From Schmidtea polychroa (taxonomy: Eukaryota): a stretch of DNA of 64,000 nucleotides. The position numbers and the translations under genes were made by a program. The notes beneath the pieces are model-generated. The model saw nothing but the letters and a program-made list of their open reading frames with translations, did no database searches and had not been told where the DNA came from. Shown here in pieces: positions 6,901 through 60,660 of this stretch. The stretch lies in NCBI GenBank assembly GCA_044892525.1, contig CM097886.1, positions 183,074,312-183,138,311 of the forward strand, in the 5' to 3' direction. Position 1 is the first letter of the stretch. Each line of letters begins with the position of its first letter.

Positions 6901-9900
6901 TTAATTTATTATTAATTTTATCCATTGAAGCCATTTCTTGAGATTTTAGTGTCTGATGGAATTCTGCAACTTTACAATTGGCTTGGGAATGATAAGCGCA
7001 TGTTTGATTTGTATTTATTTCAAGAAAGTTGAACATATACTGGAATAAAGAGTTTGTAAATTGATCTGTTACAATTTCAGATGGGATTCCATATCGGGAA
7101 ATCCCCACTTCAATTAGTGATTTTGCCACAGTTTCTGAATCTATATATTTAATGGCCAATACCTCAGGGTAATATGTTTAACTATCGATCATTGTTAGTA
7201 GATAGGACTTCTCGTTATTTGCTAGGAAGATTTGCAATTCTGCTTTGATATGACGATATACTTTTGATTTTAAGCAGGAATCGCGTTGCTGACACAACAT
7301 CTGGACATCCTTTGTCATCTTGTGTCATGTATATGAACTCAACATCAATATCTTGGCCATTCGTATTTCTGGATGAGCGACATATTTGGGTATATAGACA
7401 GTACTGTGCGAATTAGTGTGAATATGAAATAATTTACATGTTTTATCATCTAGTTATACGACCATGTCAAAATTAGCTCCAGTTTAGTTTTACTGTTCTT
7501 ATATTTGTTGTGTAATAACGTATTGGAGTTTACAGACGTGTTGTTATAGATAATTTAGTAAATTCTATTGTGCTTCCTTTAATTTTTTACTAAGACTATC
7601 CAAACTATTCTAATCTTTGTTTCTTTCTTATTTTAAAAGATGAATGTTTCTCCCAAGAAGAGCACAAAAATTGTTACCTTAAGTGAACACATCAATGTAT
7701 CAAAGAGATATTGCCAAAGAGTGTGGTGCGAGTTTAGGAGCTGTAATCAACATTTTAAAACAAAAGAAGGAATTTGAGACGGTTTAGGCGAATAGAAAAG
7801 GAAAATGTGGAAGGAAGAGGAAGACAATAATAGATGAATTTATAATAGGAGTAAGTAAATTGAATTCTAGAGAAAATAACCAGCAACTTCAGAAAGGCTT
7901 AGCACATGGTGGAGTTATTATTCCCGATTCCACAGCTTGACAATGGCTTATCAAAGTTAGAACAAGTCTAATAGACCTCAAAAAAAAACAATTATTGAGC
8001 TTTGTTTAAAAAAGTGACAACGAAAACTTTACGACAGCTCATATCAATAGAATCATTAAACGCGATAAGGACGATGTTTTGATCTGGTTATTGTATAAAG
8101 GTACCGGATCCCTTGTGTCGGTTGAAGGCATGATAAAGGCGCTTTGTTTAATTTGTAGAAATATCGTAGCTGTTTTTAAAGATTATAATTTAAAACGGCA
8201 TTATTTTCAAAAATATGTTTCCACGTATGATGATTACGACGGAATGTATCGTAAAGATAAAGTAGCTGGACTTAAGGAAAATCTGTTTTCTCAACAAACA
8301 TTTTTCAAGAGAATTGTCACTCAAAATTATTCTGTCGTAAAAATCAGTTATGTGGTAACAAATATAATTGCAAAGAAGTCGAAACCCTTCACAGATCGCA
8401 AATTTATTAAGTAATGTTTGGAAAGTCTAGCTGACATTATTTGTCCAGATAAAAAATCAGACATATCAAAAATCAGTTTATCGCAACTAACTATAGGAGG
8501 ACGAATTAAAGATATTCAGGACACCTTTGTCCATTGTGAGGCGTTTTGTAATTTGTATTTAAATAATGGTATGATGTTGTGCTTGTTTGATTGTATGCTG
8601 AAATCCTTACTTATACATTAATTATTATTTTTTAGAAACTCATAAAACAAATTAACGTTATAATTTGTTTTAATAATATTTGTGTTTTTATAATAAACGT
8701 GTTTTAGTTATGGATTCTATTAATACCCGTAGCTCTGTGGCTAATATGGCGACGACGATTGCAAATTTTATCAAGCCACCAGAAACATATGACATGAATT
8801 CAGACGTGGAAGATTTTATCTTAGAAACGGAACGATTCTTCGAGATGACAAATATTGTCGATGAATACAGAAGCAAATTCGTCAAAGCTTTTCTATCAAT
8901 CAATTCAACGAAGAAATATGAGTTGACTAATGAAACTCTGCATTATACAGAAAGATTAAGAAACGCTTTTGCTAAGAACAGAAGTCTTATCGATGATCTC
9001 AACGAAGCGCTAAATTATCGTCAAGGAAATGAGGCTGCCGAAGAATTCTGCTCAAAAATTGAGAAACTTGCAAAAAATATTTTGAAGCATAAACTTGATG
9101 AAGAAGAACTAAAGAAATTTTTGCTATTCAATTCGCTTGAAGATAAAGAAGTTAAAAAAGATCTCAAAATGCAAGATTTAAAATCATTTGATGAAATGAA
9201 AGAAAGATTAAAGAGACACGACCAAGTTTCAAAAGAAATTAATGTATTTCATGCTGATGTAGCTTCAATGAATAAAACACAACGCTATGCTGATGCTGTT
9301 AAGAAGAGCTTACCAAGATATAGTTATGATAACAGATCAATTCGAGAACGAGAAGCTAATCCCAGATTCAAAGATGAATATAAAAGAGAACCTCAACATA
9401 ATCCAAGATTCAAAGGCGATCTTACCAGAGAACATCGATATGCTATTTCAAATGAATGAAAACCTATGAATAGAAGTAAGCCTTATAATACCAGGGAATT
9501 TCATTCGCGAGATCATGTCCAAACAAATCAAATTTTGCGATGTTGGGCGTGCCACGAAGAAGGTCATAGAAGATCTGAATGCCCCAATATTCAATGTGCC
9601 CATTGTAAAAGATCTGGACATTTCAAACATCAGTGCCATGAGTTATTTCCAGGCAGACGTCGAAAATTCCATAAATCAGTGGCTGCATTCGGTGACGAGG
9701 ATTCAGAGGCTGATTTTGAGTACCCAAATGGGAATGCTCCACCACACGAGGAGGTGATCGGAGCAATAAATTAAAGGTAATTAATGATATGAGTAAGGGT
9801 TGTATGATTTTGAATGATTGTGATAGGTTGAATGATTGTGATAGTTTGAATGATAACTGTTGTGATGGTGTTTTTGATTATAGAAATTATATTAATATAT

Positions 9901-12900
9901 ACATTAATAAATTTTGTATGGATGAAGTTTTCAAAGACCCACCCCTAACTTCTAATGAACTAAATGTTCTTAATCGTGATAAACGGAATGATATAATAGT
10001 ATACGATAAAATGCAGGGAAGGCCCAGTGTTACCGTAATGATTAATAATGTAAAATTAGTATGCCTATTAGATACTGGAGCTAAAATAAGTGTGATTGAT
10101 TATAATATTTTTAAAATACTTGGAAATTTGAATATGACTACAAGTAATCTGAAATTAAGATGTGCGAATGATAGCCCGATTGAAATTTGCGGTAAAACTT
10201 TATTAAATGTAAAAGTTGATAAAATTTCTGATATTAAAAAAGTAGAATTCGTTGTAGCCAAAGATATAAACCCAAAGTTGATAGGAGGTATAGATTTTCT
10301 CGAAAGATTTGGAATGCAATTGCAAATAGAAAACCGTACAGACGAAATAAATACAATTATGGAAAATTCATTTAATAACCACATAAGTGAAGATAAGATT
10401 ATAAATAATTTAATTTCCACGTTTGACGGTATTTTTATGAAACATAAATGGGATGTTGGAAAAACCGAACTATTAAAGCATGAAATACTTACTAAAGGTA
10501 GTCCGATTGTAATAAACCCAAGACGACAACCTATACATTTAATAGAAAAAATTGAAGAAAATATTCAAGAAATGTTGAAATATGGCATTATATATGAATG
10601 TACATCTCCTTGGAATTCTCCATTAGTATGTGTTAAAAAGAAAAACAGTAGTGATATAAGAATATGCTTGGACTACCGTGCTTTAAATAATATAACCGAA
10701 AGACCTATTTTTCCCATTCCAAATACTGATGAATTATTAGATATTCTTGACGGAGCAAAGTTTTTCTCGACAATTGATTTAGGCAATGCTTATAATCAAG
10801 AAGAACTCGATGATGCATCAAAATTGAAAACAGCATTTCCGACAAAAAGCAAGCAATATTACTTTAACAGAATGCCATTTGGAATAGCAGCCGCACCAGC
10901 AACATTTCAAAGACTTCTCGTTTCCGCCAATGGAACATTAGTAAAAAGACTACACACATCAAACGAAACCATCATTTCATCATCAGAACTTTTCTTCAGT
11001 GCAGCAATGAATGAAGCAAATTCAAAGCTATCCTTACATTCGAACTCAGACGCCATTAAAGGTTTTAATAACCCATCCAAAAATTTGGCAATTTTATATT
11101 GAGCGGTTCCTACCATCGATAACACTGGTCTCATAGACATACCTGCTTTATGTACTTTTGGAAGACCATAAAACTGGTTTATATACAACGCCTGATAGTT
11201 TTTGTGAGTTTAAATATAAAAGGAATATGGTGAGAGGATTAGTGTTTCGTGCTTGGTCACTATCCTCCACGTTTGCTAATTCAGTAAAAAGTATTGATGT
11301 ATTAGTTGAGTTGTTACTTAAAAATGGCTACTCTAAATCTTCTCTTGAGAAGATGACAAAAGTGACCGTGGATAAGTTAATGTTTAAATCTGATAACGTT
11401 GGTATGCGTACGTCTGAATCTGAGGTACCTATTGATCCTGAGGAAAGAACTATGTTAAATTCGGAAAGTGACAAGAATCGATCCAATCGCATGGAGCAGA
11501 AATATGTGTTAGTATTGCCTTATTCGGAGGGTTTCAGAGAATTTAAACATAAAATTCTCAAATATGTAGACAAGGATCAATTCAGGATTGTTTCCACTTC
11601 TTGCAAAGTTAGCAGTATGTTTACTAGTAAATGTCCAACGCCAATTGGTTTGTGTTCTGAGCTCGTGTATCAATTTTCATGTAATGGGTGTAATGCCATA
11701 TACATTGGAGAGACTGCCCGTCATCTCTGCACCCGAGTTCTTGAACACTGTCGACCAAAAGGATTGACTAATATTAGTAATCATGTTAGGAAATGTGTCA
11801 GTAAAAAAATAGGTATCTCTGATTTTAAAATTATTTCAAAAGGTTTAAGTAATTATTGGGAACGAGTAACTTGTGAGGCATTGTTGATTAGATATTTAAA
11901 TCCAAAAATAAATGATCAAGTTGCCCGTTCCACGGAGAATTTGAATGTGTTTAAGTAATTGAAGGATGAAGGTTGGGAGTCGTGTTTGTGGTATAATTAT
12001 GTTTGTGTTTTGTAAACTATGTAATTTTTTTTAAATTTCTTAACTTTATGTTGAATGTTAAATGTTATTAAATTAAAATTTAATTTTAAAATAATATGTA
12101 TGTGGGGCTATGTAAAATATGGTTTGGTTTTTTAAAATATTGTTTTTGAAATATTTTTTTTAAAATTTTTGATACAGTTTGGAGATGATTATTATTAGTT
12201 AATTTGTTTAGATATTGCATATTTTATGTCTTATTATTGATTATCCAGATTGCGGCCTGACGAAGATTGTTGTACAATTGAAATATATCGCGTTTATGTT
12301 GAATTTATTGAGTTGGCATTTCTGTATTATTAAATCATTGCCACGTTTTTTTGATTATTAATAATAATAATAATATTAATTATTATTATCATAACAATCA
12401 CTAAATGATGGCAGCGATTTAAATATAAATAAAACGACAATCCAATATTAATAACTTTTTTTTAAAATTAAGAAATAATGAAATAACAAGTGATTATAAA
12501 GTAAAATTATTTATTGGTATATTTTGGATAGAAAAATAGAAATCGTTAATGAATTGCATAATTATATCTTTCTTGAATGTTGCTTTTTAAATTGCGTCTT
12601 TCAGAAGCTAGAGATATTCGTTTGAATGAGAATGCAAATGCCTTTATTGCTCTATTGATGCTAAATGTGCTAATGTTCATTGGAATTATTTCATAAACTT
12701 GCGTTCGAATTGACTCTGATGTTATTGAAACATCCTCAAGAAAAAACCTCACGCAAATTCTTTTTCAGGCGTTAACAGTTTTCCTTCGTGGCTTTTCGTT
12801 GATTCAATCCTTCCACCTTTTTGTATACACGGATAACACTCGCAACTGTTTGGTAATTTATATTTAATTAGTTTGAAATTTCTTTTATGCTTTAGCTGGG

Positions 12901-15900
12901 ATATATTTATCGTAAACAAATAGCTCATCGAATCTGACAGCTTCATACTTACAGAGATTTACATTCACCCTTAATATTTTGATTTTGACATCATTATTGA
13001 AAAAAGAGAAATAATAATAATAATAATAATTTTAAATCAATAAATAATAATAAATTAATAAAATAACTTGTCAATATATTATATAATTCAAATAAATCAA
13101 TAATTATTCCATTTCCACAAAGTTTATGAAATATTTCAACATAAAATCGATCGCCTTCACTCAAATGCGAAATTTAAAAAATTTAACAAATCGATCTGAC
13201 GCTTCATAAAATATTTATTTAAAATTCATAAATAAACCAATCAAATATTTTCTCACCGATTTGTCGTAAACCGTTTTCTTCATGATCGATTCGACAAACA
13301 GATGATGGCCTTGATTGACAGCCAATTCCAGAAATGACAGCTCGCCCTAATCAATATCAATACAAATCCAAATAATTATTTGACCTTACGATTCTGCGCT
13401 GCCCATTGATAGTGTGAGCAGAATTGAATCTCTTGAACCCGCTCATGTGCCCGTGAGTGATGCAGCGATAAAGGACGCACTGAAATTATTTATTTATTGA
13501 TTTATTCAAATAATCAGCTCACTTCTTTCATTAAATTTGCATTTTTGTCCATTTGTGCTGTCAATAATTCCATTGCATTATTGATTTCCTATTGATGAGA
13601 ATATTAATTATATCAATCAATAAATCAATCAAACTTTATCATCAATTGGTTTGTCAAGGATTAATTTAATAATCTTATCAGCATTGGACTCGATTGCTCC
13701 CTCCAGCACAGCCAATCCAGTCTAAATATCAATTATTAACCAATCAGAATATCACAAATTTACATAAATATTCTGCATTATGAAATCAGAAGATTTGAAC
13801 AAATCACCAAATGCGATTGCATCATCCCGTTCAATGGCAGGAAATAACTGAAATATTTATTCAAATTGATTCATAATGAAATAATTCACACTTTCTCCGC
13901 ATGAGTCAATATTTCCACGCGATCAGCACGATTATATTGCTTTGCATAATCCAGCGGACTCTTTCCATCCTAAATAAATAATCCAATCAAAATATCCGAA
14001 TCAGCGAATCATTTAAACATCCCCATTCACAAACAGATCATTAAAGCACTGTGGCAATAAATGGTACTAAAACCGACACTGCAAAACCGCGTGCAAAGTG
14101 TAAATACCCGTGAGATATCATGCTAAAGAAATAGTTGAGAAATGGCAAATCTGATCCGAATTACTAGCCAATGGAATTGCCGATTTGCATTTATTAATGA
14201 ATTCTGTCAGTGGAGATCTCCAAATAAATGAAGTCGACATTTCAATATTGCTTCATTCATTTCAGACATTTACTGCATAAAATTCTCCAGTGCAAGGAAT
14301 AAATTGCCAGAAAAGCTGCTAGAAAAGCTTTTCATTCATTTTGAGGCGTAGCAGAAAATATTTCAAATAGCAAAAATTATTTCTGTTGAGAAGTGAAAAA
14401 GTGAATTAAAAATAAAATCGATAGCAAGGAAATAGCCAATTAAAATGCTGAATTTAATGTGAGAAGTAGAGAAATGCAAATTTACAGGAAATATTTTACA
14501 TACCAAAACGTAAACAATATTTGTGATGAACATCTGGCCTGCACAATCAATATTCAGTGGCCATTGTTCTGCTTGCATTGCAATTATTGGCCTGATCTGT
14601 TTCACGGTAATTTTGATACAAATGCTATGTAAATATATAATTATTATTTTTAGCTTTGTTTTTATCATTATCATTAAATTATTTGTGAAATGTCCGAAAT
14701 ATTGGCAAATACAAATGAGAAACCCGATGAGTATTCTGGCAATGAAAGCGATGAACATTATGACAGTGAATATATCATACAATAGTGACAGCGACACTCC
14801 TGACAATGAAGGAGCTTCTTCCTCCTCAGAAAGCGAGAGTGAATATGAGAAATTTACAAAATAAAGGTGCGAATGTTACAGTTGATGAGCAACTATTTCC
14901 AACCAAGCTCGATGCTTTATAAATCATGACTTTGTTCTCACAATTTAGAAAGGTAAACCGAACTAAAGTTATTTTTAAAGTTATTTCAAAACATAAATTC
15001 TCTTTCATTTTATAATAATATATCTGATCGAATGGCAAGGAAATGTAGCGTCAAATCTGGGCCTAGAATATGGCCGCTTCAAGTACCTTTCAATATGCTA
15101 GGCTTAGCTGCAATGAATGCCTCGATACCATATAAGGGAACTGCAGCAGATAACATATCAATATGCTAGGCCTAGCTGCAATGAATGCCTCGATACCATA
15201 TAAGGGAACAGCAGCAGATAACATATCAATATGCTAGGCATAGCTGCAATGAATGCCTCGATACCATATAAGGGAACAGCAGCAGATAACATATCAATAT
15301 GCTAGGCCTAGCTGCAATGAATGCCTCGATACCATATAAGGGAACTGCAGCAGATAACATATCAATATGCTAGGCCTAGCTGCAATGAATGCCTCGATAC
15401 CATATAAGGGAACCGCAGCAGATAACATATCAATATGCTAGGCCTAGCTGCAATGAATGCCTCGATACCATATAAGGGAACTGCAGCAGATAACATATGC
15501 TGCTCAATACAAAATCAGAAAGCGTGTCACCAGTAAATATATCGACACCTTCAAATAGCCTCCATCTCACGCGTAAATGGCGCATGATTGGATATTGCAA
15601 TAATAATAACATCACAAATAATTATTTTCATTGCTTTAAATGAATTATTTCCAGTTTAATAATGAATATTATATTATAATTATATTTATTTATTATTTGA
15701 TAATATGGCAGCGCATGTAAGGCTACTTTATAAAGGTTATTTGCTAATCAATCGCTTCTGCTTGGGGAGCAAGATATTATATTTGATGGCCCATTGAAGC
15801 CATTATGACTGTTGCTGGTAGCAATTGCTGTGATTGTTATTGGCCGTTCTAGTGTTAGTTATCTAAATTGATAAATTATTGGCTGTTGGCAATGCAATTT

Positions 15901-16615
15901 GCTGCGGCGGCTGGTAAAGGGCAAGATCATATGATAATGCTGTCACATCGATATTGGCCATATCGGGCCTGCAGGGAGCTATTGCATTCTCACCCCGCTA
16001 ACGGTTCCATTGACACCTCATTCTGTGCTCTCTTGCCTCTCACTAGAGCTCTCTGAGGCAGTTCTCAATGGCATTTCATTCATTGCTCCTTATGCAATCC
16101 ATTTCACATATTCAATTAACCAGATCGCAACTCACCAGATTTAATTGATATTTCATTATATAAAATGTTAATGTTTACTTTTGTTCGGCAATCGATTCGG
16201 CATTTCCGCTGCAGCAATAATTTCAATATTTCTGAATGCCCATGGCAGCTAGCATAATGAATCGCTCTCCATCCCTGCAATTTATCAATTGATTATTTAT
16301 TTGCAATGATTATTTACCCATTTGGTCTCAGATTCCACATCGCAGTTGCTGTCAAGCAATAACCTGGCAATATCAACAAATCCATAACGGCAAGCAATGT
16401 GAATGGGCAACCGGCCCTGAAATCAGAAACATTAACCCAATAATTCGCATTGCCAATCAATCTCACATAATCATCAACAATCCTATGCACAAATTCTCCC
16501 CTCAAATTATCCCTGACGCCCTCCACATTTCCCCTCATCAAGTGCGCCTTGAAACATTGAAAATCCCTGCAATGCAAATTATCCAATGCAAATCATAATC
16601 AATATTTCACCCCAT
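928..16615 (-). CDS. Ankyrin-repeat protein with C-terminal C3HC4 RING finger (putative E3 ubiquitin ligase), copy 1; 21 exons, about 892 aa
   Basis: Hand-spliced exons: 16615-16611, 16566-16467, 16416-16318, 16274-16179, 13969-13892, 13847-13764, 13721-13635, 13588-13523, 13479-13390, 13346-13257, 5620-5522, 5472-5368, 5327-5229, 5177-5079, 5034-4936, 4880-4850, 2445-2150, 2108-1990, 1949-1355, 1312-1115, 1071-928. All introns are GT-AG, 17 of 20 are 40-55 bp, phases are compatible, and the 2679-nt CDS has no internal stop. Ankyrin motifs include [49 protein letters not shown]: CQIC-x10[10 protein letters not shown]6-CPFC. The joins across the three long introns are inferred from phase and motif continuity. 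Confidence 0.85.
4143..4545 (+). pseudogene. Actin pseudogene fragment, internally deleted, antisense in intron 16 (copy 1)
   Basis: [25 protein letters not shown] is joined to [21 protein letters not shown] and [43 protein letters not shown]; contains stops and frameshifts. Confidence 0.92.
4591..4605. mobile_element. hAT excision footprint TTCTAGA-A-TCTAGAT
   Basis: The orthologous site in unit 2 holds a 2400-bp hAT element flanked by the TSD TTCTAGAT. Here 15 bp remain, versus 8 for an empty site. Confidence 0.88.
6500..7430 (-). mobile_element. Decayed Gypsy-type integrase fragment
   Basis: [27 protein letters not shown]...[18 protein letters not shown] (rve core) and a C-terminal [19 protein letters not shown]; multiple stops. 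Confidence 0.8.
7640..8020 (+). mobile_element. Tc1-family transposase N-terminal remnant
   Basis: [17 protein letters not shown]...[14 protein letters not shown]...[12 protein letters not shown]...KKQLL, with a frameshift and stops. Confidence 0.78.
8127..8517 (+). mobile_element. hAT (SPIN/Charlie, GTF2IRD2-like) transposase remnant
   Basis: [23 protein letters not shown]...[26 protein letters not shown]...[15 protein letters not shown]. Confidence 0.85.
8535..10917 (+). mobile_element. Ty3/Gypsy LTR retrotransposon, 5' part (gag, protease, partial RT), truncated at a Penelope element
   Basis: gag 8680-9774 has two CCHC knuckles and one in-frame TGA. Protease [11 protein letters not shown]; RT motifs IDLGNAYNQ and [16 protein letters not shown] possible LTR (TG at 8535) and PBS-like TGGCGACG at 8747 are low confidence. 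Confidence 0.92.
10918..12360 (+). mobile_element. Penelope-like element (GIY-YIG type), 5'-truncated with an inverted RT segment
   Basis: Minus strand 10918-about 11175: FYGLPKVHK...[13 protein letters not shown] (RT). Plus strand about 11175-11958: RT C-terminus and GIY-YIG ([29 protein letters not shown]), then an AT-rich 3' region containing a hammerhead. Confidence 0.92.
12252..12294 (+). ncRNA. Minimal type I hammerhead ribozyme in the Penelope 3' region (copy 1)
   Basis: CTGACGA (12257), stem II GATTG/CAATT, then GAAA-TATA-TC. The palindromic tetranucleotide helix III is typical of Penelope hammerheads. Stem I is weak. Confidence 0.75.
12546..12946 (-). mobile_element. IS630/Tc1-like transposase HTH remnant
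   Basis: [21 protein letters not shown]...[11 protein letters not shown]...[27 protein letters not shown]...ERYNYA. Confidence 0.65.
14700..15620 (+). mobile_element. piggyBac transposase remnant in intron 4 (copy 1)
   Basis: Acidic N-terminal tract, then [13 protein letters not shown] and [43 protein letters not shown], then [12 protein letters not shown]. No TTAA-flanked termini found. Confidence 0.8.
15090..15498. repeat. 68-bp tandem array, 6 units, inside the piggyBac remnant
   Basis: Units start at 15091, 15159, 15227, 15295, 15363 and 15431; no spacers. Confidence 0.97.
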
Positions 16616-18149
16616 CTTGATATTTACTTTCTGTTTTATCTATCAATTAATTGCAAAATCAATAAATTTAATTATAATTTAATTAACAAGTTCAAAATCA
16701 AAAAATCTTACTTCCTAAAATCCAAATGAAATCAATTAAATAGCAGCCAATCAATTCTCAAGGCTAAATAATAAATTTGAAGCGATAAAACAAATCAATT
16801 GCAATCAATAATAAATGTAATATATATAATGGAATTGTCAGGCTGATAAAATTGATATTCAATATTCAATGCGACAACCGAACGATCTGACGGATTCCCC
16901 CGATGCGGCAATTATTATCAATGATTACAACATTCCATGAAGCTGCAAATATTATTATTATTCTTTGGTAACTTTCAAATAATTTGCAAGCATTACACAA
17001 ATGCCTAAATATTATTTTAAATGCTCAATTATATCCACTCAAATCCTCATGCTAATAAATAACAATATTAATAACAATTTTATACAAATCATTTAATTGC
17101 TTTATAATTGCTGATATTTCATAACATCACATATAATTGTTACATAAAATGAATAAATTTATTAATTAAATAATAAATCAAATAGAAATTATATTAATAA
17201 ATACAAAGATGAAAAACATAAAAAATTAAACATTTGAATAATTATAAAAGCCAACATAATTATATAAACAAATATACAAAAATATTATAATGGTAATATA
17301 ATTGAAAGCACATTAACGCAAAACAAATATATTTCACTAAAACTGGAAATAATAATGCTTAAATTAAATCAGCAAATGTTTAACAAAAAATATCATAATA
17401 TTCTAAAAATTTAAATATTTTAATTTCAAATATATAATGCATTAGTAAGATGGGAAACTACTTACAAAATTATTAAAAGTTTGTTTAAAATTAATGGTTT
17501 TTTGAATTTGACTTTGGAATTTGATTTACTGTTCACCTCTTAAGTGGTAATTGATAACATTTTTGTGAACATAATTTTTCAAAGTTTCTCTATGTCTCAA
17601 TTCGAATTTGGAATTTTCAGTTTTCATCATTATTTACAATCGTCTTTCTTCCAAAAGTGTATTGTTGGTTTCTGAACTATGCCGAAATTCCGAGCATTTT
17701 GAAAGCTACAGAATATTATTATTTTTACTTCATGATTCATTAGTCGAGAACACTTCAGATCTATTTCAGGACGAGGAGATTTTAATCGGTTTTTCCTTAT
17801 TAGTTTCATTCATTAAATTGCTTCAAGTTACGATCAAGGACATTTTGGATTGGTACTTATTCTGAGGATCCATAAAAACTCGAGGTTTCGAGCTTATATG
17901 ATATCACTGGAGTAATTACAAGATATAATTCTGCGTTCAATAAGGCTCATTTATAATTATTCATCTGACAATTCCACTCATATTTCATTAATGATTTTGC
18001 CAATCATGACAGAAAATAGCTATTTTAGCTCCTCGGTTTATAAAAAATTGATCAAAGATTGAACCGTAAATAATAAAGCAATTGTTGGGTCGCTTAGGGG
18101 TGTGTCATTTTATTGCTAAAATGTTTTAGGGGTATTATATGTAAGGAAT

Positions 18150-21100
18150 TGACTCCTTTCTAAACGCCTTAATGACTATTGTACTTTAGACCATCTGTGT
18201 ACCCATGTCAGAGGTGTACGCAATGATTGAAAATCAATGACCAGGTGAGCTCTATTGCTAAAATTACTCCTTATTGCATTTTCTTTTCAGATTCTGGAAT
18301 CCGATAAAAAGTCTTACGTCATTATTCAGTATCTGTTCTATCGCTAGATCATTGTCATGTTTTCATTTAACTGTGGTCTTCATTGCCCATTTCAATAATC
18401 TATTTTATGTATCCTTATGATTCTATAGCCCTTCAAATGTTTTATGGTCTGTTCTAATAACTACCTCTGTTCTATATATATGGCCTAAATTATTTCTATT
18501 GTTGAATATCTTAATTGGGCACCTTTTAACGTTTTACTTGCATTAGCTATTACATAAACTTTACATTTTTCTTCTTCTTGTATTAAGACTGCCCCTACGG
18601 CTTTACCGCTGGCGTCAGTCATAACTATAAATTGTTTTTTAAAGTCTGGGTATCTTAATATTGGTGCAGTTACTAATTTTTCGTTTATTGATCAATGTTT
18701 TTGATGTTTTGCTGTCCATTTCTTTTGTGGTTTATTGATTTTATCGTTTATACTTTGTACTATGAACACATTTTTACTTTCTCCCTTGGTTTTTATTCCT
18801 TTAGTTAATTCTATCATCGGTGCTTCTATTTTTGCATACTCTTGTATAAATTTACGATAATACCTTGTTAAACCTAAAAATCCTTGCACTTGTAATGTTT
18901 TTGGGACTGGAAACTTTTTTACAGCTTCAATTTTATCTGGGTTTAGTGTTATGCCCTCCACACTAACAATATGTTCCAAATATAACGCTGAGGGCTCCGC
19001 CCATTTACATTTAGTTGATTTAATCTTTATCTTTGTCTTTCTTAATCGCTGTAATACGTTTGTAATGTCTTTTAAATGTTCCTCAAATGTTTTTGATGAT
19101 ATTAGTATGTCGTCCATGTAAACTGCGCAATGATGTACACCTACTAATATTGTATTCATTAAACGCTGGAAGGTTGATGGTGCATTGGTTAACCCAAAAG
19201 GTAATCTTTATTTGCATAAATGGCTGAAAAATATTTAGAGTCTCTTAATTTATCAAATTGTTCTTGTGCTTTTGGAAATGGGTATGAGTCTTTTACTGTT
19301 ACGTCATTTAGTTTATGATAGTCAATGCACATTCTTATTTCTCCATCTTTTTTTCTAACTGGTACTATTGGTAGTGCCCATTGTGAAAAACTTTGTTTAA
19401 TTACACCTGCCTGTTTTAATTCTTTAATTTTTCGTTTTATTTCCTCCTTCAATTTATAAGGTACTCATTAGGGTCTTTGTTTTATGGGTCTATCATTATC
19501 TGTATCTATCACATGTCTAATGATGTCTGTATCTCCTAAATTAAATTCATGCTTAGCAAAAACATCGTTACATTCATCAATTAAGGTTTCTAATTGTGAT
19601 TGTTGATTTTCATTTAAATATTTATTATCAATTTTTACTTTATCGTAGAATTTTATGTTATTTGGTTTAACCAGTTCGACAACGTTTTCACTCGTATTCT
19701 CCGTTATTCACATCTCACTTATTTCAATAATTTGTTCTGCTTTTCCTTTAAATAGCTTTCATAGTTTTGTATCTTTATGTATTTTTATATTATTATTTTC
19801 ATAATTTGCAAATCGTATCAGGATTATTCCGTTTTTTGGAGTTACACACTCGTCTATCAGCATACATTGTGATTTTTTGTGATTGCCGTAACAAGCTCAA
19901 AAATAAAAGTGTCCTCACTTTTGATATTAACTTTTACAGGAACTATATGACTACATTTGTATTCTAGCTCTAAACCTTCTAAAACGATTACCTCTGAAAA
20001 TTTTGCGTTACGGTGGTTTGCTTTCCTTTTAACTGTACTATTTGTTAAATCTATCACACAATTTTCTAGTTTATTAAGTATGTCCATTCCAAGAACACAT
20101 AAGCTTTTGCACTCCTCAGCGACTTTAATATATATGATTTATTGTTTGACTTGCCAAATGGGCAGTTAGCTCAATGTTTTCTTTTAATGGAATATCGTGT
20201 GCTGACAATGATACCACTCTTTCTCTTGTCGTTACAATATTTTTCTTTTGATTCTCTGTTAATTAACCCTCTCTTATCAATGATGCTGCTGCTCCTGTAT
20301 CAACTTGAGCATATATGCTTATAATATCTATTGTTATTTGAAGTAGTGGTCTTGCTTCATTTGCCGATCCCCATAGGTCATTTATGCAAAGTTCCAAACT
20401 ATAGCACCCGTATATATTTTCTGGGTATACCATGACAACCTTTGCTTAGTTTTGGCATCTTAATTTCAATATTATTTTCCATTTCTTTTAATAAATCTCT
20501 TTGATTATCGTATAGGCCTTTGCTTGGCTGTTGTTCTGATTCTTCCGGGTTTCTTCATCTTTTTCTATGATCATTATTTGCTGCTAGTCTTCTCTTTGTC
20601 TTTTTATTAATCGGATCTATTTGTCATGTTTTGCTGTTATTAAATATTTCGCTATGAATGGACAAAAACATGCTATTAGCTTGTACGAATTTCCAAACAC
20701 TTGTCTGAGCTACTTTAATGACACTAATGATGGGCAAATCATTTTCAATAGAGTCACTGTATAGTATATTCATAATATTGCTGAGAACATGTTTCCGAGG
20801 ATTGCGAAATATCCCAATATAATATATAATATTTGGTATAATACTCAGTATACCACCATTTTTTAAATGTTCCTCTACCTGAGTAGTTTCCATATATACT
20901 TCATAATCATTGTAATTGCTCCGTTTATGACCTAATTGGTTTTGACTTCCTTAGTTATCGTTCTTAATTAGTTATTTCTGTTGACCATTTTAGTAATTCC
21001 CCTTCTTCTGTTTACTCTCGTTTATCCTACTGTTTAGATAATTGCTCTCTAAATTCTCAAATTGTTTATTTCCCCAAATTGCCGCGCTCAGGTTTTCTTC

Positions 21101-21420
21101 ATCGCTCGGGTTCTCCATTGGCTCGGACTTCCCATTAGCTCCGGTTATCCATTAGTCAATTAATTAATAGTTTGTGTTTTTCCATATTTGGCTGTTTTTC
21201 GACCTTTCTAAACATTTTCTAACAATTTATTGCTCACTGTTCTTCATTATTCCCAAATCTACAGCTGTCCCGTTTTTCAGCTTCAATTTCGATAACATTT
21301 CACTTTATCCCACTTCCTCAGATTTGCAAATGTTTCTATTTCGTGTCTGATTGTACTATTTTATAGTTCTGTTTTTGTCATATCTTTCTTTGCCATTAAT
21401 TCTCCGCTTGATCACCATTC
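18150..21420 (-). mobile_element. Second decayed Ty3/Gypsy element (gag remnant, RT, RNase H)
   Basis: WALPIVPVRKKDGEIRMCIDYHKLN, AVYMDDILISS, QGFLGLTRYYRKFI, and RNase H TAPILRYPDFKKQFIVMTDASG; fragmented by stops and frameshifts. Confidence 0.88.
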
Positions 21421-21779
21421 TCTTTCGTTCAATTTTGGTTTTCTTTTTACTCGAAATTATTTAATTTAACGTAATTTAATAATTCACTTTTACAACCTCA
21501 TCATAAATAATATTTGTAAATATTATATTAATAATTAAACATTAGGTAAAATTATAATATAATTATATAATTGAAATTAATAGAAATATTGTAGAATGAT
21601 GTTTTCTTGCTTTATATATTGTTGGTGTAAAATAATCCTCTTGTTTTGTACTGGACAAGACCCATGCTCAAAATAATCAACGTTTTACGGATTTCGTAAT
21701 GTGACAAATTTTTTTGGGGTACTCGAACCAAAATATATAGTCAAATTATCAACAGTATCCGGAGGTTATATTTTCTGAG

Positions 21780-22103
21780 TTTCACACCCAGCTTCTGAAT
21801 GTTATCTCAATTGTGAAGAATGAATTGAAGGAAAAGATATAAATTAAAACATTTGCGGAATTACTTCTTACAAAATATAGCTTTTTAAAAAGTGAATTTT
21901 CGGAAATCTTTATAGCTTTCATGTTGTTTTTACACTTTCTGTTACAGGAGCTTTTCTATACAGAGAGGATATTTAGCAAATTCAACATTATCAAAGATTA
22001 CAAAAGAAATTCTATTGTCCAAACTAGACTACGTGATCTTGCTATCCTAAACATAGAACATGCAGAAGCAGATAAAATGGATCTCAAAGACCTTGGCAGT
22101 TGA
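21780..22103 (+). mobile_element. hAT C-terminal dimerisation-domain remnant (ZMYM1-like)
   Basis: TERIFSKFNIIKDYKRNSIVQTRLRDLAILNIE. Confidence 0.75.
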
Positions 22104-23032
22104 CGTTCCACACGGGATGTTTATATTCTCACGATGAAATGTTCTTATGAAATATGTAATTAAGTTCCATTATCGCAGTTGTCGCAGACCGGATGTCTAC
22201 GTGATGGATGAGATGGTAAACCTAATCTCGTAATACAGAATCGAATACATGTGCTTTTGAATTTTTTCCTTGGGAAAATACGATGGAGCAATGAAATGGT
22301 CGTGTATGCTTCTTGGAATAATAAAATTTACTGATATCGGAAATTGGCTTGGAAAAATCTATCTAGCAAGATGCAAAGAAGTCGAAAATTCAGAATTGGA
22401 GTCTAAAAAGAAAATCCTATTCATTGAACCGATGATATTTAATGTCTAATCGTTGTGAAGGTAGTCATGGAAAAATTCGTTTCCAATTGTTGACGAGTGC
22501 ATCATCATCGAGGAGTGGAGATTTGCTCATAGACTAAAGGTAATATTCCGTGTAGTGAGAAGTCGTTGCCTCGGTATCACCATTCATGCGGATCAACTGA
22601 GAACTACTGACACAAGTGCCATCAATTCTCAATCAACCCCCCGAACGGGTCAAACCACATCTATAAATCATATTAAGTTATAAAAAATTCTCAATGCAAA
22701 TGTTTAATACATTTATATGAAAAATTCAAATAGTTATAAGTTCAATCAAGGTCAATATTCAGCAGTTATCTCGCCCAAGATGGAATCCTACGAAAGTTTC
22801 TCTCTCCCACAGCACAATAAATTTCTCATTTCAGACTTATTATCACACGTCTCTCCATCATGCCTCTATTTTCTCATCTCCTTCCTTTAGTTGGTCATCT
22901 CATTCGATTTCCATAGATGTCGGATTTATCCCCTCATCTTCACATGTCCATGCGATTTCCCAATGTCCTACAAAAGTTTCTGACATTCAACTATTTTCTT
23001 TCTTACTCAGTCCAATTTCTAGTGGCTGTGAT

Positions 23033-25824
23033 TAGGGAATCCATTTTTTAACAAAAACCGAATTCCGGAATTTTCGGATTTACGTAAGATGAAATTCAGA
23101 ATTCCGGAATTATTCTGGAATTGAAAAATAAAAAGTCAAGAGCAAAAAAAATGTTAATCAGCATAAATTTATTTCAAAGTAAACAAAGAAAATTTTTATT
23201 TTTGTATTAATATTAATAAAAAAAACATAAACAAAACAAATTCAATATTTAAAAATATATAATATAAAAATAAAATTTTATGTTTGCTTTTTGAAGAAGC
23301 TTCTCAGCATACACAAATTGTCCAATGTAGTATCATTAAATCTTTACCTAATTTTTGTTGAAAATGCTCCAGCGGCGGAAAAGGCTCTCTCTGCTTCAAC
23401 ACTTGTTGGGGGAATACACAAAAGGTTTTGTAAATTATTTCCAAAAATGGTCCACGAAATACACCTTCGTCCCAAAATTTTAATTCATTTCGAATCGCAA
23501 ATTGAATTGATATTTTTTTTTAAAGTTTTTGTAGTCGGCTGTAAAAGTGACTGCTGGATTTTTTGCTGCAACAATTTCTGTAAGGAGGGCTGCGTTTCAC
23601 TTTCAAAAGATTCGTTGGGTTCAAATACTAAATCAGAATCAGACTCGGAATCCGTTGAATCAACTTCAGCAGTAATTTCATCATTAAGTCGCCGGTCCAG
23701 TAATAGAATAATTTTATTTATTTCTGTTTTCGAGTGACCGGAAATGCTCTTGTGAATTTTTGTTTTGCCACCATTATGCAAATATTGTAGCACATCAGAT
23801 AAAATAGTTCTTCTCCGATTGAACTGGAGTTCTATCTCTTTTTTCAATTCAAGGGCAAATTCGTCATTCTCACTAAAATTTTGTAACATAAACGTAAATG
23901 TTGCATCCGCAGAAATTAAATTAGCATCTGCACGGCATAAGGCGTCTACGGTTAATTTTACTGGCATCAAATTTTTAGATATTCGTGATACCGAATCCCA
24001 TTCTGATTCATATAAAATTATGTCCGTTTCAATGTCAATTAATGCTTTTTTAATGAACTTTTCAAAATATTAAAACGCTCTAACATAGACAACATGCTAT
24101 TGCATCTAGTTTTCGAATCTAACACAAGCTGTAATTCTTTTTTATGATCTTGCTTCACGTATTTTTGAAGCACTTCTTTTTTCAAAGAAGAACGACGAAA
24201 GGTTTTAACAATTTTCCGAACTTTTGTGATTAATGCTCGTAGTTGAGTTTTCAGTTGTTTCCATAACATCAGTTTCAATTCCCATATCTACCCGAATTCC
24301 ATTGTCATCATCCTCATCACCAGTAAGATTTTCTTCATCTAACTCAAAGTTCCGTTCATTTTCATTATTGTCCTGCTCTACTTCGTTTTCTGTTGCATTA
24401 TCTACTAAATCCAACGTTTGCTTTTTATAGAGTACATTACCAATTGCAATTTGAATTGCATGAGCAAAACATAAAATTTGTTCGCAGGGTAACAATCTAC
24501 CAACTTTTTGCATCATGGAGGCACTATCTCTAACAATGCACAAAATATCATTTCCAATATTTAATTGGCATGATTCAAGCTTTTTTTCCAGCAATTTTAT
24601 ACAATCTTTAGACGCAAATCGGCCATTTTTACGAGCCAATCCCAAATTCCAGACCCGATCTCCTGATCCATGCACGTTAATATTTCGAGAAGAAGTCCAT
24701 TCGTCAAGTGTCAGATTGAAACGTACGTTTCTGTTTTTTTCAGAAATAATTCCCGAAATTATCGACTGCCGAATTTTTTTGCTGTAATCCATCACGACTT
24801 TTTGTATACTGGTAGATGATTTCGGAATATCACAAAATCCCCGCGTTCGTAAACATTTTCTTAAATCGTCTGAACTACAAAATATGCGAAACGGTAATCC
24901 GTCTGAAGCTACCATTCGAGATATTACTGCGGCAAAACTTTCGTCTACTTTTGAAATATAAAAATCTTTAATCGTTTTGATTTTTGTAGCTAAATCGCCG
25001 GTATTCGCACCAGCAGCATCCGTATCATCAATTTTTCGTTTATTTAAAATCTTGTTATGTTTAGTCCGCAGATGGGTGCGCATGGGTGTCGTACACCCAC
25101 CCAATATCTTTAAAGCCTTCCTACATTGTGTACATTTCGCCATTTGAGTTTTTGTCCCTCGTAAAAAATGAGTCCACACTGAATTTGAAGTAATCTCTTT
25201 GGAGACATCTATAAAAATTGTGTCTTGCTTATCCGCATTCCTTGGGATTAAACATATGTACACAAGAAATATATGAAATTTTGAAACTAATAAAACCTAC
25301 CTATATCAAATGCTACCGTGAAGAATTGAACTTGAATGGTTAATTAAATATTTATATTATTAAAATAAAATGAAATGATTTGCTGATTAGTAAATTTAAT
25401 ATTAAATATTAGACAAGAGGACGTTATTAAAATGATAATGATTTACTGTTTATTTATACTAAATTTACTATTACACTTAAATATAACATATAACACAACA
25501 CAACAAAGGAAAAAACATTTCTATTATGATATAATTTCACAAAAAATTTAAATGTCAAAACGAATAACATTATTTTTATTTCTCATGGCAAACTGTTTGT
25601 ATTTTTTTTTAAAAATAAATCGTTACAATACAAAGTAATAATATAGTTTTTTTGTATAATTTTTTGTCAGTCGCTGGAATTCCGTGTAATTTGTTAAAAA
25701 CAAAAAAATATTTAAATGCGAATAATCGGGAATTCGATTCATTTCAATTCCGGAATTTCGAATATAAAAAACAAGGCGGAATTTCGGAATTCCGAAATTT
25801 CGAAATCCGGATTTGGATTCCCTA
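23033..25824 (-). mobile_element. hAT (Ac-like, BED finger) DNA transposon, copy 1, frameshifted
   Basis: 11-bp TIR TAGGGAATCCA / TGGATTCCCTA and AATTCCGGA-like subterminal repeats. BED finger VWTHF...CTQC...MRTHLRTKH, plus LTLDEWTS, CFAH, TRCNS and IPPTSVEAERAFS. The 8-bp TSD is degenerate. Confidence 0.9.
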
Positions 25825-26559
25825 CTGGTGACGCTTTCTCAACTCAGTCTTTATTCCCATTAGGTTGACTTTTCAAACCTCTCGATACTGGCGGCGCTTT
25901 CCTTACTCTTTGTTATTTAATTTAAGCTGATTTTTCTAGTTTCTATTACTATCCTCTTTTTGTGTGTTTTCTATCGTTACTGGTTCAAGTCCTAGGTTCA
26001 CTATACTATTGTCTTTACTCCTTACGTTGTGTCCTTTTATAAACGTTTATTTCCCCTACTGTAGGTCCCAACATCCCTCTTTTTGTTACTCTTCCGGGTT
26101 TTCCCCACTCTCCTAACTCGGATGCGAAACACTCGCACTGGTCGGTCTCCGATCGTGTGGTGGATCAGTCACACACAGAAACGTTCCAGTAGATGCGATG
26201 GGCTCTGTTCCATATCTTTCGTCAGGACAGTTGGTATTTCCCTGGGCCTTATCCACACTACGCTGAGTGAAGCTCATGGGTCGTGGATTTGTCAAACAAG
26301 AAAAACAGAAATAAAGAAAAGGAATGGAACAATTAATCCTATATCCCTACATATCTCTACATTTATTATATATCATTTTGATTTGGGTGTATACACCGAT
26401 GTAAGAAATTATTTATGTATTATTAGTCTTATTCTTGGCACTCTGTTCTTCCAATACCATCTCTTTTCAATGTTGTCTTGGTTCTTCCTACCATACGGAT
26501 CTTTTATAACATAGGTTATCACTATCCGCCTGAAACCTTTCTCATACCTCATTTTGTTG

Positions 26560-26725
26560 CATAATATTGCTAATCATATAACAGTCCTGAATTACCGTGC
26601 TAATAATTCGTTGTTTTCTCCTTTACGCAACAGGAAAAACACAGATACATGTGTTCCATTAATCGTTCCATCTCCATCTGGATATATTTTTAAATTCCAC
26701 TTGTAACCATTTTTCTATGAATATA
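26560..26725 (-). pseudogene. Intronless TRAF-type MATH-domain fragment (copy 1)
   Basis: NGYKWNLKIYPDGDGTINGTHVSVFFLLRKGENNELLAR*F resembles TRAF [40 protein letters not shown]; flanked by stops. Confidence 0.7.
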
Positions 26726-27340
26726 ATGCTAGATTAGTTATAGCTATTTATGTACTGTTTTCAGCTCGTTGCATTTTCCTATTTACATCCGGTATTCTCC
26801 GTTAAGTTCTCTAGATGTATTCCTTTATCCAGTACTATTCATAAAAATGAGCAAGTACTAGCCTTTCCACAATGTTACCCATCCTGGATTCGCATTCGCA
26901 GCGGTTAGCCTTTAAGAGACGATTCGATTATCTCTAGGTCAAAGTCTTGATTAAGATTCTCTTTATTTCATATTTGGTGCCTTATTATTTATTGTGTTTT
27001 GTTATATTTTTATTTGAATGCTTATTTAATAGACTTTTGCTGTTCCGACTTTCCAAATTATCATCATGCATTTTGACATCCTTGGGTACTCCACCCTTGG
27101 ATTGGTGTGTGTACAGAATACAAAATATTAGTACTATTAATTGGCTAGATACTCATGATAATTAATCGGGATAATTACTCGAGGTAATTTGATCTTTCAT
27201 GTAGCCTCTAATCCACACATTCATATAATCACCCATCCCTCTTTTAGAGTACGTTCCAAAAGAATTCCGTTCTATGAGAACTATCACTGGATCCATTCAT
27301 CTATTCACGATTCTGGTAATATTCAAAAATTAACATTTGA

Positions 27341-31249: not shown

Positions 31250-31277
31250 TGTGAAAGCCAGTGAAAAACCCAAAAAA

Positions 31278-55000: not shown

Positions 55001-55290
55001 CCCATTAGCTCCGGTTATCCATTAGTCAATTAATTAATAGTTTGTGTTTTTCCATATTTGGCTGTTTTTCGACCTTTCTAAACATTTTCTAACAATTTAT
55101 TGCTCACTGTTCTTCATTATTCCCAAATCTACAGCTGTCCCGTTTTTCAGCTTCAATTTCGATAACATTTCACTTTATCCCACTTCCTCAGATTTGCAAA
55201 TGTTTCTATTTCGTGTCTGATTGTACTATTTTATAGTTCTGTTTTTGTCATATCTTTCTTTGCCATTAATTCTCCGCTTGATCACCATTC
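52020..55290 (-). mobile_element. Second Gypsy remnant, copy 2
   Basis: Colinear with 18150-21420. Confidence 0.88.
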
Positions 55291-55649
55291 TCTTTCGTTC
55301 AATTTTGGTTTTCTTTTTACTCGAAATTATTTAATTTAACGTAATTTAATAATTCACTTTTACAACCTCATCATAAATAATATTTGTAAATATTATATTA
55401 ATAATTAAACATTAGGTAAAATTATAATATAATTATATAATTGAAATTAATAGAAATATTGTAGAATGATGTTTTCTTGCTTTATATATTGTTGGTGTAA
55501 AATAATCCTCTTGTTTTGTACTGGACAAGACCCATGCTCAAAATAATCAACGTTTTACGGATTTCGTAATGTGACAAATTTTTTTGGGGTACTCGAACCA
55601 AAATATATAGTCAAATTATCAACAGTATCCGGAGGTTATATTTTCTGAG

Positions 55650-60494: not shown

Positions 60495-60660
60495 CATAAT
60501 ATTGCTAATCATATAACAGTCCTGAATTACCGTGCTAATAATTCGTTGTTTTCTCCTTTACGCAACAGGAAAAACACAGATACATGTGTTCCATTAATCG
60601 TTCCATCTCCATCTGGATATATTTTTAAATTCCACTTGTAACCATTTTTCTATGAATATA
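60495..60660 (-). pseudogene. TRAF-type MATH fragment, copy 2
   Basis: Colinear with 26560-26725. Confidence 0.7.

What the first reader, a model, noticed from the sequence alone, without database searches (positions are those of the whole stretch)
16179..16566. Hypervariable ankyrin binding surface on an E3 ligase: a candidate natural DARPin-like recognition system
Seen (manual comparison): exons 2-5 (373 nt) differ between units at 18 nt, 17 in amino-acid-changing codons (11 residues). Introns 2-3 are essentially identical and exons 6-10 are identical. Changes in exons 3-4 are ACRY>ACRE, ETKW|G>ESNG|G and ASCHGH>ASRGGQ; the extra exon has a third state, GF...HHASSNGH. Established: in the DARPin consensus xDxxGxTPLHLAAxxGH, the beta-turn xx, the residue after G and the xx before GH are the randomised target-contact positions, and most changes fall there. 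Inference: diversifying selection or templated diversification of a substrate-recognition surface coupled to ubiquitination, as expected for intracellular pathogen recognition or self/non-self discrimination. I know of no description of this system but cannot search.
Basis: partly seen in the sequence, partly recalled or inferred. Interest (0 to 1): 0.93.

Follow-up and report, generated by a model that had tools for sequence, protein, structure and literature searches.

The report
Hypervariable ankyrin-RING ligase gene family
Two neighbouring copies of a ubiquitin-ligase gene, probably from a flatworm, are almost letter-identical except in a few codons on the protein's target-gripping ankyrin surface, which points to an expressed gene family evolving many different target specificities, as immune-type receptor families do.

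Summary
The window holds two tandem units of about 33.7 kb (99.3% identical). Each carries an intact 21-exon minus-strand gene encoding ankyrin repeats plus a C-terminal RING finger.

- **Divergence:** exons 2-5 differ at 18 of 373 nt (11 residues changed, 1 synonymous change). Introns 1-9 differ at 2 of 2549 nt and exons 6-17 at 1 of 1245 nt.
- **Codon swaps:** four codons differ at 2-3 letters.
- **Extra exon:** unit 2 has an extra in-frame ankyrin exon from a 142-bp exon-plus-intron duplication.
- **Binding positions:** half of the variable repeat residues sit at the six DARPin library positions. In 13 related cassettes the four most variable positions are 5, 3, 14 and 13.
- **Family and expression:** public reads show a large family (exon depth 10-30 times intron depth) and spliced transcripts with at least seven beta-turn states.

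My reading is a germline multigene family of ankyrin-RING ligases, diversified by cassette exchange, unequal crossing-over and diversifying selection. I found no sign of somatic or templated diversification. The closest precedent is the hypervariable ankyrin repeats of fungal NLRs, so this is a new variant of a known kind. Other first-reader notes of this scan report further copies downstream on the same chromosome; I did not check them.

The parts
928..16615 (-). Unit 1 ankyrin-RING gene: 21 exons, 892 aa, with TE-filled introns 4, 10 and 16
   Evidence: Intact 2679-nt CDS with all GT-AG introns. Pfam Ank hits on the exons and PF13920 on the last exon.
16467..16566 (-). Exon 2 (100 nt), N-terminal cap; 1 difference (A>E)
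   Evidence: A spliced E2-E3 junction at this donor is seen in RNA contigs of paralogues.
16318..16416 (-). Exon 3: first ankyrin cassette (33 aa, phase 0); 5 nt differences (Y>E, TKW>SNG)
   Evidence: Pfam Ank 30.6 bits, exon residue k = Pfam position k+1.
16179..16274 (-). Exon 4: second ankyrin cassette (32 aa); 7 nt differences to unit 2 exon 4 (CH>RG, H>Q, 1 synonymous), 5 to the head of the extra exon
   Evidence: Pfam Ank 29.8 bits.
13892..13969 (-). Exon 5: truncated ankyrin repeat (26 aa); 5 nt differences (Y>I by TAT>ATA, NR>KC). Lies outside the finding's coordinates.
928..1071 (-). Exon 21: C3HC4 RING finger with a short C-terminal tail
   Evidence: PF13920 zf-C3HC4_3, 32.6 bits (cut-off 27); all eight zinc ligands can be read in the sequence.
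31278..50469 (-). Unit 2 paralogue of the same gene, 22 exons with the extra cassette; ORF intact
50172..50270 (-). Unit 2 exon 3
50030..50128 (-). Unit 2 extra cassette exon (33 aa): head of the exon-4 type with a third set of variable residues (F, H, SN), tail identical to exon 3
   Evidence: Pfam Ank 26.4 bits.
50030..50171 (-). 142-bp exon-plus-intron duplication that adds the cassette
   Evidence: 142-nt gap in the unit alignment. Self-match 49920-50074 against 50060-50216. The two intron copies differ at 1 nt.
49891..49986 (-). Unit 2 exon 4
47619..47696 (-). Unit 2 exon 5
4599..27340 (.). Tandem unit 1, aligned to 38331-61275 at 99.3% identity
   Evidence: non-exonic substitution rate 0.33%.
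38331..61275 (.). Tandem unit 2

Best explanation
This is one locus of a tandemly arrayed, expressed multigene family encoding ankyrin-repeat proteins with a C-terminal RING finger, in what is probably a flatworm.

The N-terminal repeats are built from cassettes of one 33-residue ankyrin repeat per phase-0 exon plus a 43-nt intron, 142 bp in all. Cassettes are kept nearly identical, introns included, by unequal crossing-over and gene conversion within and between paralogues. The same processes change cassette number: 2 here, 3 in the next unit, 4-5 in relatives.

A handful of codons resist this homogenisation. They lie on the beta-turn and the first helix (DARPin positions 2, 3, 5, 13, 14, plus 10 and 1) and stay highly diverse, often differing at 2-3 letters per codon. 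This is best explained by diversifying selection on the ligand-binding groove. Each germline gene would then encode one fixed specificity, and the RING would ubiquitinate whatever the groove binds.

Shown: the gene structure, the codon-restricted divergence, the cassette duplication, the family size, the splicing, and the enrichment at contact positions.

Inferred: selection as the cause, ligase activity, and any role in recognising fast-evolving targets such as pathogens, mobile elements or non-self.
For: - **Gene:** intact 21-exon ORFs in both units, with ankyrin and PF13920 RING domains.
- **Divergence:** 18 of 373 nt in E2-E5, against 2 of 2549 in introns 1-9 and 1 of 1245 in E6-E17 (p = 8e-15). 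Non-synonymous divergence of 0.053 is about 65 times the intron divergence.
- **Codon pattern:** four codons carry 2-3 changes (simulation p = 0.0025). Changes are biased to transversions, 15:3 against 39:32 in the background (p = 0.03).
- **Cassette duplication:** the 142-bp duplication has an identical tail and a near-identical intron, but 9-10 differences in the hypervariable head codons.
- **Contact positions:** variable positions are enriched at the DARPin library positions between the units (OR 7.8, p = 0.004). Across 13 cassettes from the window and relatives P0041, P0153 and P0272, the top four entropies are at positions 5, 3, 14 and 13 (Mann-Whitney p = 5e-4). The register was checked against Pfam Ank and ankyrin-1 structures. 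Contact positions 2, 3, 5, 13, 14 and 33 are as given in PMC1261162.
- **Family size:** DNA runs place 200-339 contigs on 1.7 kb, with exon depth 10-30 times the intron depth.
- **Expression:** only the RNA run shows spliced joints: intron 1 exactly as modelled, a 5'UTR intron, and cassette-to-cassette junctions. It also shows at least seven beta-turn states.
- **Real variants:** the unit 1 and unit 2 states at several differing sites occur in independent runs.
- **Cassette number:** it varies from 2 to 5 across family members.
Against: - Only two full copies could be compared at nucleotide level.
- dN/dS within the exons is 2.07 and not significant (p = 0.39), because exonic synonymous divergence (0.026) is also raised. 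That is what import from paralogues would give.
- Half of the variable residues lie outside the six DARPin positions (positions 1, 10, 15, 16).
- The relatives used for the family profile come from unlabelled 'metaclust' records of unknown species.
- No structural model could be obtained (pLDDT 37), so mapping onto the binding face rests on sequence register and the literature.
- The linkage of variant codons within each unit depends on an assembly of near-identical 34-kb units with N gaps between them.
- Ligase activity and targets are untested.
Confidence: 0.6

Rival explanations
1. Neutral patchwork. The differences are short gene-conversion tracts copied from diverged paralogues, with no selection for new binding specificities. 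The variable codons are simply unconstrained.
For: Many paralogous donors exist. Exonic synonymous divergence is also raised, so dN/dS is not significant. Because cassette introns are shared across the family, tract ends would be invisible.
Against: Unconstrained codons cannot diverge faster than introns under neutrality, yet across the family the introns and framework codons stay homogeneous. Diversity instead peaks at positions 5, 3, 14 and 13. Only 1-2 of the 18 changes are synonymous.
Confidence: 0.15
2. Assembly, phasing or polishing artefact. Reads from many paralogues were mixed in the multi-copy exons, or haplotypes were laid out as tandem units, so the two 'copies' are chimeras.
For: The differences sit exactly in the high-copy exons, while the more unit-specific flanks are clean. 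N gaps flank the unit junctions. Public runs hold only 36-66% of the window's sampled words.
Against: Both units keep perfect ORFs and splice sites. Both letters at differing sites (for example 50101, 50238, 50507/8, 50624) occur in independent DNA and RNA runs. Related proteins from other records show the same variable positions. Other first-reader notes report further copies downstream (unchecked).
Confidence: 0.08
3. Somatic or templated diversification, similar to lamprey VLR assembly or chicken Ig gene conversion, acting on the cassettes within an individual.
For: The cassette architecture with phase-0 exons and many near-identical donors would allow it. Many cassette variants occur in single runs.
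Against: Both genes are complete germline ORFs, and there are no orphan cassettes in 64 kb. The variant diversity is also seen in DNA contigs at depths consistent with germline copies. No evidence bears on tissue differences.
Confidence: 0.04
4. Decaying duplicates. One or both copies are recent pseudogenes under relaxed constraint.
For: The genes lie in TE-rich DNA with giant TE-filled introns.
Against: There are no stops, frameshifts or broken splice sites in 21-22 exons. Changes avoid framework residues. E6-E17 are essentially identical. Family transcripts are spliced.
Confidence: 0.05

Closest known systems
Fungal NLR (STAND) proteins with highly internally conserved ANK, TPR or WD repeats (Podospora HET-E/NWD family; Dyrka et al. 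2014, PMC4986451)
   Same: Near-identical repeats, repeat-number polymorphism by recombination between repeats, and a few positively selected hypervariable sites on the concave ankyrin face. They are interpreted as non-self receptors.
   Different: This gene has no NACHT or NB-ARC domain; its output domain is a RING finger. The organism is an animal, probably a flatworm. Each repeat is a separate phase-0 exon with a conserved intron, and the genes sit in 34-kb tandem units.
Designed ankyrin repeat proteins (DARPin libraries; positions 2, 3, 5, 13, 14, 33; summarised in PMC1261162)
   Same: A constant 33-residue framework, with diversity concentrated at the beta-turn and at the end of helix 1. 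The family's four most variable positions are library positions.
   Different: This is natural and germline-encoded. Positions 10, 1 and 29 also vary, position 33 only moderately. The tails carry conserved cysteines that are absent from the consensus.
Expanded E3 substrate-adaptor families under positive selection (nematode F-box and MATH-BTB; see PMC8120010)
   Same: A ubiquitin-ligase specificity module duplicated in tandem clusters, with selection on the substrate-binding part. A proposed role is targeting foreign proteins.
   Different: Those are adaptors for cullin ligases with other binding folds. Here the binding domain and the RING are in one chain, and the variation is cassette-based.
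TRIM5alpha and fish finTRIM (RING plus a hypervariable B30.2 domain); from my own knowledge, not checked here
   Same: RING E3 ligases whose recognition domain has hypervariable patches in multigene clusters, acting as intracellular sensors.
   Different: The domain order is reversed, the recognition fold is different, and there is no repeat-cassette shuffling.
ANK-plus-RING ligases: Mind bomb (MIB1/2) and plant XB3/XBAT
   Same: Ankyrin repeats followed by a PF13920-type RING. The nearest named Atlas clusters are mib1-like and XBAT-like.
   Different: Pfam scans of the two relatives P0041 and P0003 found only ankyrin and RING domains, so no MIB/HERC2 or ZZ domain. The XB3 RING model scores 16.8 bits against a cut-off of 50. 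Hypervariability is not a known feature of those families.
Lamprey VLR
   Same: Repeat-cassette architecture used for recognition diversity.
   Different: VLRs are assembled somatically from donor cassettes into an incomplete germline gene. Here the genes are complete, and no donor cassettes were found.

Membership tests
Ankyrin repeat (Pfam PF00023) | 33-residue repeat matching the Ank profile above the gathering score | tested here: met
   Exons 3 and 4 and the extra exon score 30.6, 29.8 and 26.4 bits (cut-off 21.1), aligned to profile positions 2-33.
RING finger E3 ligase (zf-C3HC4_3, PF13920) | Eight zinc ligands in C3HC4 spacing and a profile score above the cut-off | tested here: met
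   32.6 bits against a cut-off of 27. The pattern C-x2-C-x11-C-x-H-x2-C-x2-C-x6-C-x2-C can be read in exon 21.
RING finger E3 ligase | E2-dependent ubiquitin transfer | not testable with these tools
   Needs an in-vitro ubiquitination assay.
DARPin-like recognition surface | Diversity concentrated at repeat positions 2, 3, 5, 13, 14, 33 on a constant framework | tested here: met
   6 of 12 variable positions between the units are library positions (OR 7.8, p = 0.004). Across 13 cassettes the top four entropies are at positions 5, 3, 14 and 13 (p = 5e-4). Diversity is not exclusive to these positions: 10, 1, 29 and 16 also vary.
Family under diversifying selection | dN/dS significantly above 1 at specific codons | tested here: inconclusive
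   Pairwise Nei-Gojobori dN/dS is 2.07, p = 0.39. dN compared with intron divergence gives p = 2e-14. Site models need many more nucleotide sequences.
Fungal-type NLR with internally conserved repeats | Central NACHT or NB-ARC NTPase domain | tested here: not met
   Pfam finds only Ank and RING domains in P0041 and P0003. In the window gene I scanned 12 of the 21 exons (2-5, 11, 15 and 17-21) and likewise found only Ank and RING.
Fungal-type NLR with internally conserved repeats | Repeat-number polymorphism between copies or alleles | tested here: met
   2 cassettes in unit 1, 3 in unit 2, 4 each in P0041 and P0272, 5 in P0153.
Fungal-type NLR with internally conserved repeats | At least 85% identity between repeats of one gene | tested here: inconclusive
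   Cassette heads differ at 6-10 of 63 nt, but the last cassette has a different tail. P0153 repeats 3 and 4 are identical.
VLR-like somatic cassette assembly | Incomplete germline gene flanked by donor cassettes | tested here: not met
   Both genes have complete ORFs. tblastn finds no cassette outside the genes.
Mind bomb / XB3-XBAT | MIB/HERC2 and ZZ domains, or an XB3-type RING | tested here: not met
   Pfam scans of the relatives P0041 and P0003 show only ankyrin and RING domains, so no MIB/HERC2 or ZZ domain. PF24921 scores 16.8 bits against a cut-off of 50.

The most novel reading that the evidence does not exclude
Flatworms carry a large germline repertoire of 'natural DARPin-degraders'. 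These would be ankyrin-cassette receptors fused to a RING ligase, with binding grooves diversified by cassette shuffling and selection. They would serve as an intracellular recognition-and-destruction system for viruses, mobile elements or non-self proteins. This would be an animal counterpart of the fungal NLR repeat receptors, but wired directly to ubiquitination.
Probability: 0.25. Interest if true: 0.85.

Novelty: new variant of a known kind. Interest (0 to 1): 0.6.

Why it matters
If the reading holds, this is an animal example of a recognition repertoire built on ankyrin repeats rather than Ig, LRR or B30.2 domains. It would be coupled in one polypeptide to a ubiquitin ligase.

That would give planarian innate immunity, or genome defence, a concrete candidate receptor family. 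This matters in an organism with no adaptive immunity and a TE-laden genome. It would also offer a natural precedent for engineered DARPin-E3 degraders.

The one-repeat-per-exon cassette with a conserved intron is a clean system for studying how concerted evolution and diversifying selection coexist at a scale of a few base pairs.

Tried and rejected
- **Structure:** a single-sequence AlphaFold model of the N-terminal repeats of relative P0041 failed (mean pLDDT 37). No structure-based mapping was possible, and I ran no further search on a shallow alignment.
- **Protein databases:** they hold very few family members: P0003, P0041, P0153, P0272 and some C-terminal fragments. Their contigs are not on record, so I could not collect nucleotide sequences of paralogues or run site-model dN/dS.
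- **Spliced window proteins:** they have no reference form, so they were not submitted to the search or fold tools.
- **Read laying:** this was limited to one call on 1.7 kb of unit 2, chosen to avoid the 68-bp tandem repeat in intron 4. Only 40 of 160 variant positions were printed. Exon 5, and most of the exonic differences, could therefore not be checked in reads.
- **Simple unequal-crossover origin of unit 1 from a three-cassette ancestor:** rejected, because unit 1's head is a mosaic in the wrong order and has unique states.
- **DGR-like mutagenesis:** rejected, because the changes are not adenine-specific.
- **N-terminal MG as a myristoylation signal:** Asp after Gly argues against it (my own knowledge of the motif); left open.
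- **Literature:** searches found no description of this family in flatworms.

Full report
**Context.** The window is AT-rich (about 30% G+C) eukaryotic DNA. It is dominated by a tandem duplication: 4599-27340 matches 38331-61275 at 99.3% identity, and the flanks match too, giving a period of about 33.7 kb. The non-exonic substitution rate between the units is 0.33%. Retrotransposon and hAT-like ORFs fill much of the units. N gaps lie near the unit junctions.

**The gene.** On the minus strand I assembled a 21-exon gene for unit 1. The CDS runs from 16615 to 928, is 2679 nt (892 aa), and every intron is GT-AG with no internal stop. Most introns are 40-55 nt. Introns 4, 10 and 16 are 2.2, 7.6 and 2.4 kb and hold repeats and transposons. 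Exons 3-15 mostly encode one ankyrin repeat each, in phase 0. The last exon encodes a complete C3HC4 RING (PF13920, 32.6 bits against a cut-off of 27). Unit 2 carries the same gene at 50469-31278, also intact. This agrees with the model noted by other first-reader notes on this window, which I re-derived independently.

**The observation.**
- Exon by exon, the units differ at 1, 5, 7 and 5 nt in exons 2, 3, 4 and 5. That is 18 of 373 nt, in 11 changed residues plus one synonymous change.
- Introns 1-3 and 5-9 are identical, and intron 4 has 2 substitutions in 2194 aligned nt.
- Exons 6-17 differ at 1 of 1245 nt.
- Exons 2-5 against introns 1-9 give an odds ratio of 65 (p = 8e-15).
- Four codons differ at two or three letters: TAT/GAG, TGC/AGG, CAT/GGA and TAT/ATA. 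That is more than a random scatter of 18 hits gives (p = 0.0025).
- Changes are biased to transversions, 15:3 against 39:32 in the background (p = 0.03).
- Exon 5, with five of the differences, is at 13892-13969, 2.2 kb outside the coordinates given.

**The extra exon.** Unit 2 has a 142-bp insertion (50030-50171) made of one exon plus one intron. The new 33-residue exon is in frame. Its tail is letter-identical to the tail of exon 3. Its flanking introns differ at 1 nt. Its head is of the exon-4 type but differs from both exon-4 copies at the same few codons, with residues F, H and SN. The three exon-4-type heads differ from each other at 6, 7 and 10 of 63 nt, almost all in codons 2, 7, 10, 11 and 13.

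**Mapping to the ankyrin framework.** Pfam aligns exon residue k to Ank profile position k+1. The alignment to ankyrin-1 structures gives the same G-x-T-P-L-H-x-A-A-x-x-G-H register. In DARPin numbering, the ligand-contact positions randomised in libraries are 2, 3, 5, 13, 14 and 33 (PMC1261162). Between the units, 6 of 12 variable repeat positions are library positions, although these make up only 15 of the 91 repeat positions compared (OR 7.8, p = 0.004). The other variable positions are 1, 10 (twice), 15 and 16 (twice). By helix periodicity, position 10 lies on the same face as 13 and 14; this is my inference.

**Relatives.** Searches with the long C-terminal exon and then with the hits found a small family:
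- P0003, 774 aa.
- P0041, with four N-terminal cassettes.
- P0153, with five cassettes and the same N-terminus, MMGDFQCF.
- P0272, with four cassettes.

All have the same ankyrin-plus-PF13920 design. The nearest ESM Atlas cluster is from Platyhelminthes. Together with the composition, the tiny introns and a chromosome longer than 143 Mb (position given), this suggests a planarian; that is an inference. Across the 13 exon-4-type cassettes, the framework is almost invariant. The highest entropies are at DARPin positions 5, 3, 14 and 13, followed by 10, 29 and 1. Library positions average 1.90 bits against 0.67 for the rest (p = 5e-4).

**Reads.** I laid Logan contigs of four public runs on 49230-50900.
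- In the DNA runs, 200-339 contigs map. Summed depth over the cassette exons is 10-30 times that of intron 4, and individual variant contigs have about a tenth of the intron-4 depth. This indicates a many-copy array and a much larger pool of cassette-like exons; the copy numbers are rough inferences.
- Letters matching the other unit's state at several differing sites (50101, 50238, 50507/8, 50624) occur in independent runs, so the variants are real.
- Only the RNA run shows spliced joints. These are intron 1 exactly as modelled (50420/50465), a 72-nt 5'UTR intron, E2-E3 and cassette-to-cassette junctions.
- Across those junctions, the three residues before each cassette start read as DKW, DQW, DKA, KS, SNG, TKW and DRL.
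- RNA runs also hold 15-24% of the sampled words of the E5-E10 stretch.

So the family is transcribed and spliced. Expression of these exact two copies is not shown.

**Mechanism.** Unconstrained sites cannot diverge faster than introns, so neutral drift in place is excluded. The local pattern is most simply produced by exchange of cassettes among paralogues. Because cassette exons and their introns are homogenised across the family, any conversion or unequal crossover changes only the hypervariable codons. The raised exonic synonymous divergence and the non-significant pairwise dN/dS (2.07, p = 0.39) fit this. The 5' part of the gene is even more similar between the units than the background (2 of 2549 against 69 of 18839, p = 0.015), and the 3' end is less similar (98%), so the units have a mosaic history. 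What then needs explaining is the family-level pattern: a constant framework and introns, with diversity at contact positions. Concerted evolution plus diversifying selection is the established explanation for the same pattern in fungal NLR repeats (PMC4986451).

**Alternatives I could address.** Nothing supports somatic or templated assembly. Both genes are complete, and no orphan cassettes exist in the window. An assembly artefact is unlikely for the variant states themselves. It remains possible for their linkage within units.

**Comparison and novelty.** The design principle is known from fungal NLRs, from DARPins as an engineered analogue, and, in a looser sense, from positively selected E3 adaptor families (PMC8120010). 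TRIM-type sensors are a further loose analogue (my own knowledge). What is new here is the combination of an animal host, a RING ligase in the same chain, and exon-intron cassettes in 34-kb tandem units. I found no paper describing it. I rate it a new variant of a known kind, of moderately high interest. The functional claim (immune-type recognition) remains a hypothesis.

Noticed in passing
window 1262-1267 (unit 2: 31612-31617): In exon 20, six consecutive letters differ between the units (TCATTG against CTGAAA, SL>LK), just before a conserved GGDIY motif of a C-terminal ankyrin-like repeat. The same two residues vary among relatives (RS, LL, QA, NI). This may be a second hypervariable spot.
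   Followed up: partly
window 15090-15498 and 48817-49216: A 68-bp tandem repeat of 6 copies, 97% alike, inside intron 4 of both gene copies. The two units differ here by a 15-nt indel.
   Followed up: no
window 3817-4497 (+ strand), inside intron 16: An actin-like fragment on the opposite strand (Pfam Actin, 20 bits, below the cut-off; it contains an ITIGNE..RCPEAL motif). Probably a decayed retrocopy.
   Followed up: partly
window 8677-11955 (+), 18488-20445 (-), 23488-25296 (-): Retrotransposon gag/protease/RT ORFs inside intron 10, a second RT-bearing element between the genes, and a BED-zinc-finger hAT-like ORF. All are shared by both units, so they predate the duplication.
   Followed up: partly
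window 34321-35300 and 35928-38331: Unit 2's intron 16 is 3.4 kb longer than unit 1's (5772 against 2404 nt). The insertions are specific to one unit.
   Followed up: no
window 746-3964 against 31082-34321: The 3' end of the gene and its flank are 98.0% identical between the units, against 99.3% elsewhere and 99.9% in the E1-E10 region. The units have a mosaic history.
   Followed up: partly
window 30780-31369 and 746-1019: A 39-bp-period tandem repeat lies just downstream of the stop codon of each gene copy, with different copy numbers.
   Followed up: no
cassette exons (for example 16318-16416) and relatives P0041, P0153, P0272: Cassette tails carry two conserved cysteines (N-C-x-I-E-C) in the loop where consensus ankyrin repeats have G-A-D-V-N-A. 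The first is invariant; the second is replaced by serine in the window's internal-type tails (exon 3 of both units and the extra exon) and in one P0272 cassette. Their role is unknown.
   Followed up: no
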